From assembly GCA_907165135.1 (NCBI GenBank), contig OU015569.1:6448001-6512000 (forward strand): a DNA stretch of 64,000 nucleotides, written 5' to 3'. Below are positions 28,500 to 35,803 of this stretch, piece by piece. The notes beneath the pieces are model-generated. The model made no database searches and was not told the DNA's origin. It saw nothing but the letters and a program-made list of their open reading frames with translations. This DNA is from Oikopleura dioica. Taxonomy: Eukaryota; Animalia; Chordata. How positions within the stretch are numbered: position 1 is the first letter of the stretch; the number at the start of each line of letters is the position of its first letter. Both the position numbers and the translations under genes were made by a program.

Positions 28500-31400
28500 A
28501 TGCGGCTGCAAGGGGATAGGCCCAATCCCAACCAAAAGAACTTTCGCTTTCCTATCACCGATTACAAGGCGGGTTCTATTGTCTATCTCTGCATGGAGAA
28601 TTTCATGAGCACCGACTTCACGGAGTACAAGTTCAACCCGACTACTAACTACATCTTCGGCGCTAACGGAACTGGGAAGTCGACCATCGTGGCTGGATTA
28701 TTCCTTGTCTTCGACGGCCGAGTTAGCAAATTGGGACGCTCTGATGACTTGTCAATGTTCGTTAATCGAGAACGACCAAATAAGAAAGCGCGGATCACTG
28801 TTGAAATTTCAACTGGCAAAGGTACTACGATCGGCATCGAGCGATCTTGGTGCTCTGGAAAGAACAAAAACACTCGATGGAAGATGAGAGCCGGTAAGAA
28901 TCATCTATTTTAGTCTTAATTTTGAATTATTTTTACAGAGAGATCGTCGACCTTCCATCCTTTGAACAACAAAGATGAGCTGACACGTACTCTCAACAAA
29001 TACAATCTTCATGTGATGAACTTGATGCAGTTTCTGCCGCAGGAGAAAGTGAACGATTTGAGCGACCTTTCGTCCAAAGATCGACTCGAGGCGTTTCAAC
29101 AGAGCATCAGCGATGGGAAGGAGAACTTGCTCTTGAAGCACCAGAAACTGATTGAGTACCAGAAGCACATGAAGGACGCCAAGAACGAGATCCGTGTCGC
29201 AGAAAACGCACTCGTTGATTTGAAACGCACGCGAGACCGCGATCAAGTACGAGTCGAAAGATTCAACGACATGAAAGCGGCTCTGGAGAAGAAACAGAAG
29301 CTTGTCCTGATCAAGAATACTGCGGAATGGTGTCTCAAGAAAGAGCTGCTCGAGTTCGTCGAAGGCTGTTTCGAAGATTGGGAAGAACAGCACAAGGAGG
29401 TGAAAGAGAAACTGTTGAAAGAATGCTCGTTTAATCTCGAGAAACTGGACAAGGAGGAAGCGACTCTCAAGAAAAGACTCTTTAAAGATCAGGGAGTGTT
29501 TGACGATAAGAAATCTCAGGAGTACAAGCTTCTGATGAAAGCCGTTGCTGCAAGCACCTCATTGACTTCGAATATTTATCGCGTCAACAAATACAAACAA
29601 GAAACGATTGACGTGATGACGGAGAATCAGGAGCTTGACATTACGATGAAAAACAAAGAAGAAGCATACCCGAAGACGAAAGAAGCTGCTGAGGAAAATA
29701 AAGCTGAAAGAGAACGGCTGAAGCAGGAGTACCTGCGAAATATTGATGGGTTGGAAAAGCAGGTCAAGCGTCTAAGGCCGTCGGAAAATGATCTTCGAAA
29801 AAAACAAGAAGAAGCTCAGGTCGCGATCAGTACGTTCGAAAAACAGCTCAACAGTATCGAAACTAAGTTGAAAGCACAGGAGAACTTTGATGCACAGCGA
29901 ATACTTGTTTTGCAGCGAACAGAGTATTTCAAGCGCGCCCAAGTGGATCTTATGAACACGATCAAGTTATGGGAATTGATTGACCAAAACAAGCAACGTT
30001 TTCGTGCTGAGGTGTTCCCTCCTCCCATTCTCTCCCTCGGCTGCCTTCCAGCTCATCTTGATATCCTAATGGACTCCGTGCACAGCACCCCACTCATGTC
30101 CATCATTTGCCAGACAAGCGAAGATCTGCGGGAAACCAACGCGCTCGCAAGAGAGAATGGTCTCCACAGAATCGCCAACGCTCGAGTGGAGAATGGAAGC
30201 GTCGACCGAATCAAGAGCGATCGGATCGACTTTAAACGATATGGGTTCGAATGCTCACTGATTGATTTTCTCATCGGTCCAGAACCTGTGCGACGATACC
30301 TTTGCCAAAATGCGAACGTGCATAACATCCTCTACGGACAAAAAGAGCCTAACCTTGCGAACATGAGCGAGCGCGACCAAAAAATTGCGGACCTATTACG
30401 TCTACAACAAGAACGCGCGGGTGTTCAAGAAGGTTGTTCGCCGACAAAATCAGTACACAGGCAACTTTAATACTGTCGACACAAACCCACAATCAAGAGC
30501 TTCTTTGGGAGAGTGCTTCAAATATTTCAAAGACTCAGGTAATGAAGAACTGCTGAAGGATTCTTCTTAACTATTCTCTTTAGAAAAGGAGGCCCAGCTG
30601 TCGAAGCAACGTGCAGACATCGCCAAACAAATGGAAGTCGTAGAGCGAAGACTGCACGAGATCAAAAAAGAACGTCATACGGTTGCAGTCCAGATCACTG
30701 ATTTGCAGAAAGAAATGAATGAATTGAAGACAGAGCTGAAGGGCGGAAACTCGAAGGAGCACAAGGTCCGTGGCGCGCTCAAAGAATACAACAGCATTTT
30801 GCGCAAACGCAAGAACACTCCTTTCATTGTCCTCGAACTTCAAAAGTTCATCAAAAAGGAAATGGAGCAGAGCATTGAAAACTTGAAGGTATGAAAAAGA
30901 AATAGATCAAAGAAACCCTATCTCTTTCGTTTAGACTGTTGGAAAATGCATTGAAGCCCTCAATCAAAAGTTCAACTTGGAGAAAGACCATGTAAAAAGC
31001 TACATCGAAGTCTGCGGAAAGAAGGCGTTCTTTTTGAAAGAGAAGGAAAAGCGAGAGTCCCAATTGAAGGATCAAATCGAGCAGGGGGCATTGTTCAAAC
31101 AGGACAGGGATATTGTTAGACAGCTTGTCGCCAGAGCCGCAAGCAGACTCATTTCTCAAGGCGATAAAGTCTTGAACAAGAAGGATGTGAAAGAGATCGT
31201 GAAGCGCGTGAAGAAAATGACGGAATGGAAGGAGGACTACGTCAAGATGCCCGAAATTACTGATATCAAGCAGTAGTAAGTCCTTTTCCCGAATCGGGGA
31301 CCCTGATGAGCTATGAAAATAATTATAAAAATCTCGACAATGAATGTAATTAAATATTTCTAGCAACGACAAGGAGGAGCAGCTAATTGAAAAGATCGGC

Positions 31401-32256
31401 CTGGAAATTCGCCAAGCTCAGGCAAAGTATGAAGAGCTCAGATCAATGGGAACGCCGATTGATGAGTCCGATGTCCAGAATTACCACACTCTGGTCAGGA
31501 AGATTGAAACCGAAACTCGACGCATCGAGAAGCTGAAAAGACAGGATGCGAATCAGGCCAATGTTACCGAGGAGCTAAAGAATGCCTGGTATCCTGAGCT
31601 TCAAGCGCAGGTCGCATTCGTCGCTCAGCGTTTTAAGGTACATCTTCTTACCAGTAATTTGTTTTTATGTTTGAATTAATAGAAAAACTTTGCGACGATC
31701 AACTGCAGAGCTGATGTAGAGCTTTATATCCCGGATAACCCAAACGACTTCAGTGAATATGGGCTGGATATTAAAGTTCAATATCGAGCTGGCGACGAGA
31801 TGGCCATCATTAAGGTCAATCGACAGTCAGGAGGAGAACGCTCTGTGGCTGCCATGCTCTTCCTGCTCTCAATGCCGACCAAGAACTGTCCCTTCCGTCT
31901 TGTGGATGAGATTAATCAGGTCTTTATTTTGTCTTATCATAACATTCTCGTGTGTTTCGTTTCTAATTCATATTTTAAGGGAATGGACAGTTACAACGAG
32001 CAGAATGTCTACAAGGTTGTCAAGGAACTCACTGACAACGCGAAAGAGAAGGAGATGTGCCAGCTCTTCATCATTAGTCCGAAGGTACAGCAGCCACGCT
32101 TAGCGTCCAATTTGAGCTCATTTTCAGCTCCTTCGAAACATCAAATACTCGGAGAAGGGATCTGTAAGCATTCTGCACAACTCCTTCCCGCGATGCCCGA
32201 CGACTTTCACATCTCCGATGTCGGAGCTCGCTCAGATCAAGCAGATCGAAAGTTAG
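28500..32256 (+). CDS. SMC5: Structural maintenance of chromosomes protein 5
   Basis: GSIVYLCMENF, Walker A GANGTGKSTIV, long coiled coils with hinge, signature QSGGERSV, CPFRLVDEINQGMD and PKLLRNIKYS. Confidence 0.93.
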
Positions 32257-32705
32257 AAGAAAGGCGCATAAAAATAGTTATCTTTAGTTCACTCATTGCC
32301 ACTAACTCATTGGAAAACCCAGAAACCTGTTATTTAAGTTCACTGCCTTATACTTCCTACCGTTCCTTCTATCGGTTGCTGGTTATATTTTTATCCCATA
32401 CAAAGCGGTCAGCTCGTAATATGATTGTACGTTACAATTTGTACCTGAAATTGAAATAAAATAATATTTGCCTCGAGATCTCACTGTGTCCATTTGCCCC
32501 GCCGCGTTCACAACTGTTTGGTTCGTTCTGTATTTTGACCCCGATTTTGAAACCGTCACCGATAATATCGGAGTTTTCGGTTGCGCGAATCCTTGCCGCG
32601 TTTTTTTCGAAGCATAACATAAGAGAAATCGCACGTAAGTTTGGATAAAATGAAAACGTATAATGATTTCTAAAACAAAGGTTACTGTTCAGAATATTCT
32701 TTGAA

Positions 32706-33726
32706 ATGGCGAAATCCGGCGAGGATCTCATTCGGGGTTATGAGAGTCTTGACGACGAATGCGAGGAAATGCTGAGCCTCGCGAAACGAATTCAGAGCTT
32801 CAGGAGCTGGCCGTTCGGCGAGCAGTTGTGTAAGTGTTACTTTCAACGACGTTGCAAGTAACAAATTTACGTTTAGCTCCTGACAAAATGGCAAAAGCTG
32901 GCTGGTACCAGACGGGTCCTCTTTGCTGCCGTCATGTGATTTTAACGAAAGAACTTGACGGCTGGGATGGCACAGAGGATCCTGTCAATGAGATCGTCAA
33001 GAGGAAATCTGCGCTTACGACATGCAAATGGTCGCCTGGAATAAAATCACTTAGCATTCCAGATAATGAGATCCTCGTTGGTACACGATATCGTCTCCTG
33101 CAGCTCCAGAAAATATGTGAGTTCTCTTCTCCAAGAATGATTATCAAAAGCGCTTTTAGGCTTTCGGGAGGAAACCATTGCCAACCTCTCAGAATGGCAT
33201 GTGGAACGAAAAGCACAGCTGATGGAGGATCTTCGCAAGAAATATCCAGTTGAGGAAGACGCCGAACATCAGATTGCGATTTTTGAGAGTACCATCGGAC
33301 GAAATATGCGCGAGCAACTCGAGGGGATTCAAAACAACTTAGAGGCGATGAAGAAACACTTTTCAGTCAAGTTCAGAACGAAGAAAAACGCGCCCAAGAT
33401 AAAATTCCAGGGAAAAGCAGAGGACCATGATATCCCGTTGGCAGCATTGGCCGATAAAAAGTGGATTGATGTCGTCGCAAATGCAGATGAAAACGAGCCT
33501 CCAGCGGACTCTCTTCCAAAGGTAAAGTCGCGTTTTCCTTTTTAAATCTTATAAGACTTTTGTATAGCCTCTCTCCGGAAGCAAATCTCGCCAATCGATG
33601 CTTGTCTCAGCGAACCCGCATGCGCAGCCACCGTCTGCCCGTAAAGCACAAAAGGAGAAGAGCCAATTCTCCCGCAATACATCTGGTTACCCTTCCATTC
33701 CAGAGTTCGCTTCTATTCCCGAGTAA
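32706..33726 (+). CDS. Survivin-like BIR protein with a borealin-like C-terminal helix (candidate fusion)
   Basis: Exons 32706-32829, 32877-33116, 33160-33530 (possible 45-nt intron 33366-33410) and about 33568-33726 join in frame. BIR motifs RIQSFRSWPF, PDKMAKAGW and KELDGWDGTEDPVNE. Confidence 0.8.
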
Positions 33727-35803
33727 TGACTCTTCTCTACTCTCCTTTCTTAGTCCTAAAATTCGACACTGCTCTTGTCTTCGACACTCTTATCATTCCA
33801 ACCTAGCAAACATACTCATATCTCCCGTCATACTGAAACAAATAAAATGAATCTCATTGGATATTGTGTCTCGAGGTGACATTTATCATTCCAAAGTCAT
33901 GTCGTATTTGTTCGTAAATCAAGAAGGCATTTTGCAGAAAAGAGATTTTTAGGGGATAATACTCAGATTTAAGGACCGAGCTTCCATTTGATGGAAAGTT
34001 GTAAATTAATTTTCGGCTTTGGGGTGATGGATTTGAGCAGGCCCAAGGGAGGCGGAGGAGATCAGGATCGAAGTTTCGCGACCGAGGCTCTCATTAATCA
34101 AAAACAAGTGTGAGTACAGAAGCCACATACGTGCCAGATTGTTGCCGAAAAGGTCACTCGATACAGGCGCACGATCATCGAATTTTCGATATTCTGTCCA
34201 TCCTACCTAAAATTTATCTTGATCCTAAAGTCCTCCATATGCTGGTCTCTTTAAATCTAGTTGAACGATACTCGTCGACTTCATTGGCAACAAAAAATGA
34301 ATTAAATTACGATGAATTTTTCGAAAAAAAGAGCTACTTATTCTTCAAAAGTTAAATTAAAAAATAAAGTACCTGGAGATGGTAAAAACCAATTGTCGAA
34401 TGAAACCGGAGGCTAAGAAGTGATTTTGTATTTGTGAGTGGGCTTGCTTTTCACATTGAAGTAATGTGTTGATGCATGTAAGGAGTGCTTTAAAGATCAA
34501 GCAGCGGTGTGCAGGTTGATCAGGCAGATGTTGCTCGCTTCAAGGGTAGACTCTTAAAGGCTTGTTGCCAGCGAGGGGTCCCAACACCTTACCCGATTAG
34601 CTAATCCGATATCGACAACATAGATCTGACTTTGCTTTCGTCGACTTTCCACTCCTCCTTACACAAATCTGAACATAATTCCTGCATGATCTTCGGCCCC
34701 AAGATACAGATACTCGTTCGAAATAGAACAAAATGAATTGGGTTTAAAAGTTTTAAGGTGTACCTTCTATTACACAGTAGGAAAGCATTCGGACTTTATT
34801 GGCGCACCTTCCTTTTGAGGTGAAGGTGCTGCATGGATGGCAATTGATTTTCGCCCCGTGCGACTTTTATCACTCGTCGGGAGAGCCTTTTGATCTCTGT
34901 ACTCGATCGCAAGTTCGATAATAAATAAAACAGACTATAAATATTTACAACTGCATGAATGGATCAGAAAATAACAACGACAGAAATACCCCTCTACTAT
35001 TTTTGCAGACGATACAAGTTTATTGTAAAATTAAAAACAAAATATATTATCATCAACAATCATAACGAAATTTGGAGAAGTATACTCAAATATAAATTAT
35101 AGGCTATAATTTAATGCCTTGCCTCTAGGCCCTAGAAGTTATAGCCTATAACGTATATCATTCAAGATCTGTTGATACGTTTAGAACAGAGTGAAAATAA
35201 AGAAGGTTTTAAATATCATCCATGCTTTCCTAGGTTAAATATTGCCGTAGAGAGTATTGTATCATTATGGTGTAAACAGTTATTCGATCTATAATAGAAG
35301 TTATATAACTAGGCTTCTTAATATTTGTAGATCATAGTATCAAAGTCTAACGAGAATACCGCGAGGGCGCAAGAGTTCCCTTGCGTACGCGTGCGCGTGC
35401 CCAAGTCTCGCCGCAACAGCGCCAGCGCTACCACAGCCATATCAGGCTTCTGCTCATCCCTTCTGTGAAGCACTCACCTGTGTGTGACCCTTCTTCAAAG
35501 CTCCTTGAGACACAAACAAAAATATAATTAACTTTGGAAACTACTCTTGAGAATTGATTTTTTCTGGATTTACGAAGTTCCTCTAAATAGAGAAAGACCA
35601 GAAAAAGGCGCATAAAACTTCGACAGGTGCGAATTCGTGGGAATAGTCTGCTCTAACTTGCTGGCAGATATCACGTTGTGGAAGACCACCCGAGACGGCC
35701 TTCTTCCAACCGTTACTCGTATCTTCTTCCCTCTTTCCAAGCAGACGTTTACCTCTTCAAAACATCACAAAACAACCTCGGAAGTATTCGCAAAAAAACT
35801 CTA

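What the first reader, a model, noticed from the sequence alone, without database searches (positions are those of the whole stretch)
32877..33116. BIR domain lacking the canonical zinc ligands but retaining the H3pT3 pocket
Seen: gap-free alignment to survivin gives C57->H, C60->L, H77->I and C84->L, while K62, E63, L64, G66, W67, D72, P73 and E76 are kept (D71->E, H80->R). A CC pair lies just upstream and one Cys three residues after position 84. Established: C57/C60/H77/C84 bind Zn, and the KELxGW/acidic patch reads phospho-H3T3. Inference: this is a zinc-free or re-liganded BIR fold that may still read histone tails.
Basis: partly seen in the sequence, partly recalled or inferred. Interest (0 to 1): 0.7.

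Follow-up and report, generated by a model that had tools for sequence, protein, structure and literature searches.

The report
Survivin BIR domain without zinc ligands
This exon encodes the histone-reading domain of the cell-division protein survivin in the tunicate Oikopleura, and here, and in every appendicularian-type relative found, the four zinc-holding residues thought essential to this fold are replaced while the histone-tail pocket is kept.

Summary
Window 32877-33116 is exon 2 of a four-exon gene (32706-33726, + strand, about 295 aa). It is the orthologue of Oikopleura dioica CBY10606.1 / E4XJG3.

- **Ligand positions.** Independent alignments (HMMER against the PDB, MAFFT with 32 canonical survivins) put H, L, I and L at survivin C57, C60, H77 and C84.
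- **Not a sequencing error.** Independent DNA contigs carry the same codons. A wild metagenome variant differs in exon 2 by 4 synonymous changes and 1 non-synonymous change.
- **Under selection.** dN/dS for exon 2 is 0.10-0.19. Full-length cDNA-type contigs and RNA reads of relatives show that the gene is expressed and spliced.
- **Shared across the group.** All 16 appendicularian-type sequences recovered lack the CCHC set. None of 170 complete BIR domains in the other top representatives lacks all four ligands.
- **Fold retained in prediction.** AlphaFold2 models of the closest full-length relative give a confident survivin fold (Z 12.6, rmsd 2.6 Å to human survivin). This holds even with no CCHC sequence in the alignment.
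- **Pocket kept.** E63, L64, G66, W67, P73 and E76 are kept, D71 becomes E, and H80 becomes R, the known class-B survivin state.
- **Re-liganding unlikely.** The upstream CC pair and the Cys at +3 are not conserved outside close kin.

Most likely this is a zinc-independent BIR fold that still reads the H3 tail. Both metal content and peptide binding are untested. The second O. dioica survivin paralogue mentioned in the literature was not traced.

The parts
32706..32829 (+). Exon 1: start codon, N-terminal helices and the R-x-x-S-F-x-x-W-P-F start of the BIR domain (phase 1 at its end)
   Evidence: Translation. tblastn with the cDNA-type proteins P0005-7 and P0009. RNA reads of a relative join ...WPYGEQV-S directly to position 32877 (loose ends).
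32877..33116 (+). Exon 2: core of the survivin-type BIR domain and the start of the long helix (the finding)
32933..32935 (+). His at the position of zinc ligand C57
   Evidence: Alignments. Across the appendicularian-type sequences this position is H in 12 of 16, otherwise N, S, D or C.
32942..32944 (+). Leu at the position of zinc ligand C60
   Evidence: Relatives have L, A, V, S, T or N here.
32993..32995 (+). Ile at the position of zinc ligand H77
   Evidence: Relatives have I, V, T, A or Q here.
33014..33016 (+). Leu at the position of zinc ligand C84
   Evidence: Relatives have L, F or N, or H/P in the most distant kin.
32924..32929 (+). CC pair (positions 54 and 55), invariant in the window's subgroup but S-T, S-A or T-T in the sister subgroup
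33023..33025 (+). Cys three residues after position 84; not conserved (C/I/Y/H among close kin)
32948..32965 (+). K-E-L-D-G-W, equivalent to survivin K62-W67 (phosphate contact and Ala1 pocket wall)
   Evidence: Residue roles from PMC3327328.
32975..33004 (+). E-D-P-V-N-E-I-V-K-R, the equivalents of D71 (here E), D72, P73, E76 and H80 (here R, the class-B state)
33026..33040 (+). K-W-S-P-G, part of an insertion after position 84 that is absent from canonical survivins. K-W-x-P is invariant in the window's subgroup and nearly so beyond it.
33160..33521 (+). Exon 3: the rest of the survivin-type long helix, a second long helix (about 33252-33371) and a basic linker
33568..33726 (+). Exon 4: disordered tail with the conserved motifs KSRQSML, PPSARKA and SIPEFASIPE, then the stop codon
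   Evidence: dN/dS is about 0.05.

Best explanation
Exon 2 encodes the BIR domain of the survivin (BIRC5) orthologue of an Oikopleura dioica-complex genome. [quoted passage not shown] In this lineage, and in every appendicularian-type relative recovered, the CCHC zinc site has been lost. In this gene it reads H/L/I/L, and three of those four positions are aliphatic in the window's subgroup. The domain most likely keeps the BIR fold without the structural zinc. Filling the former metal site with side chains probably holds it together, perhaps helped by a shortened beta1-beta2 loop and an extra K-W-x-P segment. The peptide groove (L64, W67, E at 71, E76, R at 80, K at 62) is kept. The protein therefore most likely still anchors the free Ala1 amino terminus of histone H3 and contacts phospho-Thr3 in the manner of class-B (Arg-80) survivins. 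That would bring Aurora B to centromeres. Shown here: the gene model, absence of the ligands, their absence across the group, purifying selection, expression, and the predicted survivin fold. Inferred: absence of zinc, how the fold is stabilised, and H3pT3 binding.
For: Gene and identity:
- The four-exon model is confirmed by tblastn with full-length cDNA-type proteins.
- RNA reads of a relative show the exon 1-exon 2 junction at 32877.
- The orthologue cluster holds CBY10606.1 / E4XJG3_OIKDI.

Ligands absent:
- Searches give the same register.
- The same codons stand in DNA runs X5 and X7; X7 differs in exon 2 by 4 synonymous and 1 non-synonymous change.
- dN/dS of exon 2 is 0.18, 0.19 and 0.10 against three relatives.
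- 16 of 16 appendicularian-type sequences lack CCHC.
- In the other top representatives, 161 of 170 complete BIR envelopes match CxxC..H..C strictly. The 9 exceptions are spacing variants, truncated gene calls and one H77M; none lacks all four ligands.

Family and fold:
- Pfam BIR scores 24.8-29.2 bits, above the 22.9 cut-off, in the full-length orthologues.
- The family profile against the PDB gives survivin E=6e-7, NAIP 7e-5 and other IAPs above 4e-3.
- AF2 has pLDDT above 90 over most of the BIR and helices. It gives the same secondary structure with an alignment that holds no CCHC sequence.
- Foldseek TM-score normalised to survivin is 0.76-0.79. VIA-align gives Z 12.6, rmsd 2.6 A, model residues 21-154 on survivin 6-138.

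Pocket and pathway:
- Pocket residue roles, and H80R as a functional phospho-specific class-B state, come from PMC3327328.
- H3-pT3 marks O. dioica centromeres when Aurora B concentrates there: PMC6986761.
Against: - No metal or binding measurement exists, and AF2 cannot see zinc and knows the BIR fold from training.
- E65, which binds H3 R2 and whose E65A mutant abolishes binding in human survivin, is D here and H, G or A in the sister subgroup.
- K62 is N in the Bergen O. dioica orthologue and in P0005, and K62A abolishes phospho-binding in human survivin.
- In the sister subgroup the former ligand positions are polar (T, T, N) rather than aliphatic, so a simple hydrophobic-core replacement does not hold for the whole group.
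- His at position 57 and the CC pair are conserved in the window's subgroup for reasons this explanation does not account for.
- Feng et al. 2019 (PMC6681789) mention Survivin paralogues in O. dioica. I traced only one, so a canonical copy may share the work.
Confidence: 0.6

Rival explanations
1. Re-liganded metal site. The domain still binds zinc or another metal through a new ligand set built from the upstream CC pair, the His at position 57, and the Cys at +3 or an acidic residue.
For: C-C-R-H is invariant in all seven sequences of the window's subgroup, down to 44-50% overall identity. Cys at position 55 and His at position 57 lie two apart on a predicted beta strand, so both would face the old zinc site. 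HMMER tends to pull canonical C57 onto these Cys columns.
Against: There is no conserved third or fourth ligand. Positions 60, 77 and 84 are aliphatic. The +3 Cys is C/I/Y/H among close kin. The CC pair is S-T, S-A or T-T in the sister subgroup and absent in P0013, P0097 and P0128, while the architecture stays the same.
Confidence: 0.15
2. The BIR-derived domain is only a structural remnant. The protein works in the CPC through its helices and conserved tail, and no longer reads H3pT3. Reading is done by a second, canonical survivin paralogue or by another route.
For: Survivin paralogues are reported in O. dioica (PMC6681789). E65 is not kept, and K62 is N in two orthologues. The tail of exon 4 is the most constrained part of the gene (dN/dS about 0.05). 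Survivin-type proteins are defined by the helix rather than the reader domain (PMC9680938).
Against: Exon 2 is the best-conserved large exon (75-87% amino-acid identity against about 50% for exon 3). The invariant residues of the window's subgroup include exactly the groove (E63, L64, G66, W67, E at 71, P73, E76, R80), which a mere scaffold would not need. No canonical appendicularian survivin was recovered, though absence is not proven.
Confidence: 0.2
3. Artefact or pseudogene: the odd residues come from sequencing or assembly errors, or from a decaying copy.
For: None beyond the unusual residues. One contig of run X5 lacks a base in an A-run of exon 3 (33384).
Against: The codons are identical in independent DNA. 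The frames are open with canonical splice sites. dN/dS is 0.05-0.19 in all exons. Full-length transcripts exist in metatranscriptomes, and RNA reads show splicing. The same state is found in 16 of 16 relatives.
Confidence: 0.02

Closest known systems
Human survivin / BIRC5 (PDB 1F3H, 3UEF, 6YIH)
   Same: A single N-terminal BIR fold followed by a long helix. Model residues 21-154 superpose on survivin residues 6-138 (Z 12.6, rmsd 2.6 A). It is the best sequence match of the family profile (E=6e-7). The Ala1/pT3 groove residues K62, E63, L64, G66, W67, D72, P73 and E76 are kept.
   Different: All four zinc ligands are replaced (H/L/I/L). The beta1-beta2 loop is about 4-5 residues shorter. An extra segment holding K-W-S-P-G follows position 84. 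E65 is D and D71 is E. There are about 150 extra C-terminal residues: a second long helix, a basic linker and conserved tail motifs.
Class-B survivin of non-mammalian vertebrates (Xenopus Survivin-B, R89)
   Same: Arg instead of His at the phosphate-contacting position 80. In PMC3327328 this state gives phospho-specific, pH-insensitive H3T3ph binding.
   Different: Class-B survivins keep the CCHC zinc site and the short architecture.
Plant BORI1/2 and other helix-defined Survivin-type proteins (PMC9680938)
   Same: They show that the reader module of survivin-type CPC subunits is evolutionarily plastic while the helix is the constant part.
   Different: In those proteins the BIR domain is replaced by an unrelated FHA domain. 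Here the BIR fold itself is kept and only its metal site is lost.
U-box versus RING (from general knowledge, not tested here)
   Same: A precedent for a small zinc-stabilised fold whose metal sites were replaced by side-chain interactions with retention of function.
   Different: It is an unrelated fold and function, named only as an analogy for the mechanism.

Membership tests
BIR / IAP repeat (Pfam PF00653) | Sequence match to the family profile above the curated cut-off (22.9 bits) | tested here: met
   Full-length natural orthologues score 29.2, 28.8, 25.4 and 24.8 bits. The window's exon 2 alone, without the exon-1 part of the domain, scores 17.7 bits. The joined window protein was not scanned.
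BIR / IAP repeat (Pfam PF00653) | C-x2-C-x16-H-x6-C zinc-binding ligand set | tested here: not met
   H, L, I and L stand at the four positions. The set is absent in 16 of 16 appendicularian-type sequences. Of 170 other complete BIR envelopes, 161 match it strictly and none lacks all four ligands.
BIR / IAP repeat (Pfam PF00653) | BIR fold: three-stranded antiparallel sheet flanked by short helices | tested here: met
   AF2 of P0005 gives helices at 30-35 and 48-53, strands at 56-60, 63-66 and 72-74, and helices at 82-88 and 92-95, with pLDDT of 84-97 per ten-residue block. The result is the same without CCHC rows in the alignment. BIR domains of BIRC6, cIAP and XIAP match at Z 8.4-10.2. This is a prediction, not a solved structure.
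BIR / IAP repeat (Pfam PF00653) | One structural zinc ion bound | not testable with these tools
   This needs metal analysis of the recombinant domain.
Survivin / BIRC5 (CPC subunit) | Single BIR followed directly by a long helix that enters the CPC helical bundle | tested here: met
   A helix at 114-154 follows the BIR in the model. The whole stretch 21-154 superposes on survivin 6-138.
Survivin / BIRC5 (CPC subunit) | Closer to survivin than to other IAP-family BIR domains | tested here: met
   The family profile against the PDB gives survivin 5.6e-7, NAIP 7e-5 and ML-IAP/XIAP/cIAP at 4e-3 or weaker. Foldseek ranks 1-22 are all survivin.
Survivin / BIRC5 (CPC subunit) | H3 Ala1/pThr3 groove residues (K62, E65, D71, E76, H/R80, L64, W67; PMC3327328) | tested here: inconclusive
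   In the window, K62, L64, W67 and E76 are kept, D71 is E, H80 is R (class B) and E65 is D. Among relatives, K62 is N in two and E65 varies (D/H/G/A).
Survivin / BIRC5 (CPC subunit) | Binds Borealin and INCENP and travels with Aurora B | not testable with these tools
   The literature only states that O. dioica Survivin paralogues are expressed during mitotic proliferation (PMC6681789).
Borealin (as a fusion partner in the C-terminal extension; idea of note s1-331756) | Sequence similarity to the Borealin N-terminal helix or C-terminal domain | tested here: not met
   The profile of the C-terminal 180 residues finds no Borealin chain in the PDB at E up to 10. It finds no Borealin Pfam family at E up to 1. 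Structural mimicry was not tested.

The most novel reading that the evidence does not exclude
Appendicularian survivin is a naturally zinc-independent BIR fold that is still the working H3pT3 reader of the chromosomal passenger complex in a chordate. That would show that the CCHC site, treated as defining and indispensable for BIR domains, can be dispensed with by evolution. The added second helix and conserved tail may take over part of what Borealin does elsewhere.
Probability: 0.35. Interest if true: 0.75.

Novelty: new variant of a known kind. Interest (0 to 1): 0.55.

Why it matters
[quoted passage not shown] A whole animal group whose survivin lacks all four ligands, yet keeps the fold in prediction and the histone groove under purifying selection, would have two consequences:
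- It would be a natural experiment on how a small metal-dependent fold becomes metal-independent.
- It would give a zinc-free scaffold for studying or engineering H3-tail and IBM-peptide readers.

It also bears on how the reduced Oikopleura cell-division machinery localises Aurora B. The papers I could search name O. dioica Survivin paralogues but do not mention the loss of the zinc site.

Tried and rejected
- **Exon 2 alone** against Pfam and the PDB gave only sub-threshold scores. The case had to be made with full-length natural orthologues.
- **Oikopleura-only HMM.** Tabulating ligand columns over all 297 BIR envelopes failed because HMMER shifted canonical C57 and C60 by one or two columns. 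I replaced this with MAFFT and a regular-expression count.
- **Second O. dioica Survivin paralogue (PMC6681789).** The paper gives no identifiers and has no supplement held. There is no second copy in the window. The sister subgroup (P0199, P0206, P0012, P0016) has no NCBI O. dioica member, so it probably comes from other species. This stays unresolved.
- **Synteny.** P0001's contig is collinear with the window at 84% nucleotide identity. Downstream of P0004's contig nothing matches, and the NTF2 neighbour of P0009 is not in the window.
- **Borealin similarity** of the C-terminal extension: none by sequence.
- **The RNA 'joint' 33382->33566** was not taken as splicing. The reads come from a lineage less than 90% identical, the ends are non-canonical (GA..AT), and the letters between the two sides are not known.
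- **Literature on zinc-less BIR domains:** nothing relevant.
Distances between candidate ligands in the model could not be measured.

Full report
**Anatomy**

The finding lies in exon 2 of a small four-exon gene on the + strand:
- Exon 1 is 32706-32829, with the ATG at 32706 and the donor GTAAGT.
- Exon 2 is 32877-33116, with the donor GTGAGT.
- Exon 3 is 33160-33521, with the donor GTAAAG.
- Exon 4 is 33568-33726, with the stop TAA.

The introns are 43-47 bases long, as in Oikopleura. tblastn with full-length, intron-free proteins from metatranscriptome contigs (P0005, P0006, P0007; 299 aa) and P0009 (277 aa) reproduces all four exon blocks and finds no second copy in the window. Natural full-length relatives stand in for it.

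**Identity**

The 90%-identity cluster of P0006 contains CBY10606.1 / UniProt E4XJG3_OIKDI, 'unnamed protein product [Oikopleura dioica]'. The window's protein is 75% identical to it in exon 2, with saturated synonymous divergence (dS about 1.9). The window therefore comes from another deep lineage of the O. dioica complex or a close species; this is an inference. P0001's contig is collinear with window 31366-33224 at 84% nucleotide identity, including the upstream gene.

phmmer of exon 2 against every PDB chain returns almost only survivin. Its alignment has no gap between residues 49 and 84. It places H, L, I and L at C57, C60, H77 and C84, with K62, E63, L64, G66, W67, D72, P73 and E76 kept, D71 to E and H80 to R. 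MAFFT with 32 canonical survivin-like sequences gives the same register.

Statistical support comes from the whole domain:
- Exon 2 alone is below the Pfam BIR cut-off (17.7 against 22.9 bits).
- The full-length orthologues pass it (24.8-29.2 bits).
- A four-sequence family profile hits survivin at 5.6e-7, ahead of NAIP (7e-5) and other IAPs (4e-3 or weaker).

**Not an error, not a pseudogene**

- Logan contigs of an independent DNA sample (X5) are identical over exon 2.
- A marine-metagenome contig (X7) differs in exon 2 at five places. Four are synonymous and one is A83T, and none touches a ligand codon.
- The two RNA-seq runs laid carry the Bergen-type orthologue (reads less than 90% identical). 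They show exon 1 joined to exon 2 exactly at 32877 (...WPYGEQV-S-PEE...) and read CCRHVIVLNELD.
- Pairwise dN/dS (NG86) is 0.18, 0.19 and 0.10 for exon 2, 0.13-0.15 for exon 3 and about 0.05 for exon 4.

**The loss is shared across the group**

The exhaustive profile search of 1.84 billion representatives gave 174 hits at E of 1e-3 or better. Cluster look-ups and contig reads added more. Three sets share the architecture of a BIR-like domain, long helices, and a tail with S-R-Q-S and P-P-S-A-x-K:
- The window's subgroup: window, P0001, P0002, P0005, P0167, P0007 and P0009. All have G-P-L-C-C-R-H.
- A sister subgroup: P0199, P0206, P0014, P0015, P0018, P0020, and the loci L009 and L012. These read L-S/T-T/A-R-H and have an intron after G-W-E that the window lacks.
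- Three distant full-length proteins: P0013, P0097 and P0128.

The residues at positions 57/60/77/84 are:
- H, then L/A/V/S, then I/V, then L/F/N in the window's subgroup.
- H (N in P0018), T, T/V, N in the sister subgroup.
- S,N,A,N in P0013; D,T,Q and H/P in P0097; and C,T,Q and H/P in P0128.

None of these sequences has the CCHC set, and only P0128 keeps one ligand.

As background, 161 of 170 complete BIR envelopes in the other listed representatives match C-x2-C-x14-19-H-x5-9-C. The nine exceptions are spacing variants of the last Cys, truncated gene calls and one H77M. None lacks all four ligands.

**Fold**

AlphaFold2 of P0005, the closest full-length relative (78% identical to the window in exon 2), was run with a 39-row alignment. 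It gives mean pLDDT 79.9, with blocks of 84-97 from residue 11 to 200. A second run used only appendicularian-type rows, with no CCHC sequence. It gives the same secondary structure, with pLDDT of 81-94 per ten-residue block over residues 11-140, which hold the BIR domain.

Foldseek ranks human survivin first for both models, with TM-scores normalised to survivin of 0.76-0.79 and 0.73-0.76. VIA-align gives Z 12.6, rmsd 2.6 A, 127 residues, model 21-154 on survivin 6-138. Isolated BIR domains follow at Z 8.4-10.2.

Caveats: AF2 does not model metals and has seen many BIR domains. Model coordinates are not exposed, so I could not measure what surrounds the former site.

**Mechanism**

According to PMC3327328:
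- L64, W67 and E76 form the Ala1 pocket.
- D71, E76 and H80 anchor the N-terminus.
- E65 binds R2.
- K62 and H80 bind the phosphate.
- H80R converts human survivin into a phospho-specific binder, and Arg is the natural state of class-B survivins.

In the window's subgroup E63, L64, G66, W67, E(71), P73, E76 and R(80) are invariant. R80 and E76 are present in every appendicularian-type sequence that covers them.

Two points argue against full conservation of function. E65 is D here and variable elsewhere. K62 is N in the Bergen O. dioica protein and in P0005.

O. dioica does mark centromeres with H3-pT3 when Aurora B concentrates there (PMC6986761). Survivin paralogues are expressed in proliferative stages (PMC6681789).

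My reading, at about 0.6, is a zinc-independent BIR fold that still reads the H3 N-terminus. Three of the four former ligand positions are aliphatic in this subgroup. That suggests side-chain packing in place of the metal, possibly helped by the shortened beta1-beta2 loop and the inserted K-W-x-P segment; this is an inference.

**Rivals**

- Re-liganding (0.15) has the invariant C-C-R-H of this subgroup in its favour. It has no conserved third or fourth ligand, and the CC pair is lost in the sister subgroup.
- A non-reading structural remnant beside a canonical paralogue (0.2) cannot be excluded, because I could not trace the second O. dioica paralogue. Conservation of exactly the groove residues argues against it.
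- Artefact or pseudogene is refuted.

**Surroundings**

Beyond the survivin-like helix (114-154 in P0005) the model has a second long helix (158-197). After that come a basic K-F-R-T-K-K-N-K-P-K stretch, a short confident helix around L-W-D-D-V-V, and a disordered tail whose motifs are the most constrained part of the gene. Another first-stage note (s1-331756) proposed a survivin-borealin fusion. The profile of this region finds no Borealin in the PDB or Pfam, so the idea is neither supported by sequence nor excluded structurally.

**Novelty**

O. dioica Survivin is named in the literature (PMC6681789), and the Bergen protein is in UniProt as uncharacterised. Nothing I could search mentions a BIR domain or survivin without its zinc ligands. 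I rate it a new variant of a known kind, of moderate to good interest, resting on experiments still to be done.

Noticed in passing
window 33252-33371 (second helix) and 33568-33723 (tail): The protein is about twice the length of canonical survivin. AF2 predicts a second long helix right after the survivin helix. The tail motifs KSRQSML, PPSARKA and SIPEFASIPE are conserved across all appendicularian-type kin and have the lowest dN/dS of the gene (about 0.05). Their function is unknown, and no Borealin similarity was found by sequence.
   Followed up: partly
window 33384: One contig of DNA run X5 lacks one A of the A5 run in exon 3, which would shift the frame. The window's frame matches all homologues, so this is probably an error or a rare allele in X5.
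   Followed up: partly
L001:715-1548 (P0009): This more distant relative (44-50% identical, C-C-R-H kept) is encoded without any intron. Its 2.2-kb contig also carries an NTF2-domain gene on the other strand. The window's gene has three introns. This is either intron loss or gain between species, or a transcript-derived contig.
   Followed up: no
L009:178-459 and 500-700; L012:265-612 and 616-1350: The sister subgroup has an intron inside the BIR domain, right after G-W-E, where the window's exon 2 is continuous. This is another case of intron turnover in this gene family.
   Followed up: no
window 31366-32390: The upstream + strand gene is collinear with, and up to 89% identical in translation to, the 290-aa ORF of contig L004. 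It was not identified.
   Followed up: no
window 32650-33780, runs X15/X16: RNA runs labelled with the same species as the window's likely source carry only a version less than 90% identical, matching the Bergen-type P0006. The species label therefore covers deeply diverged lineages.
   Followed up: partly
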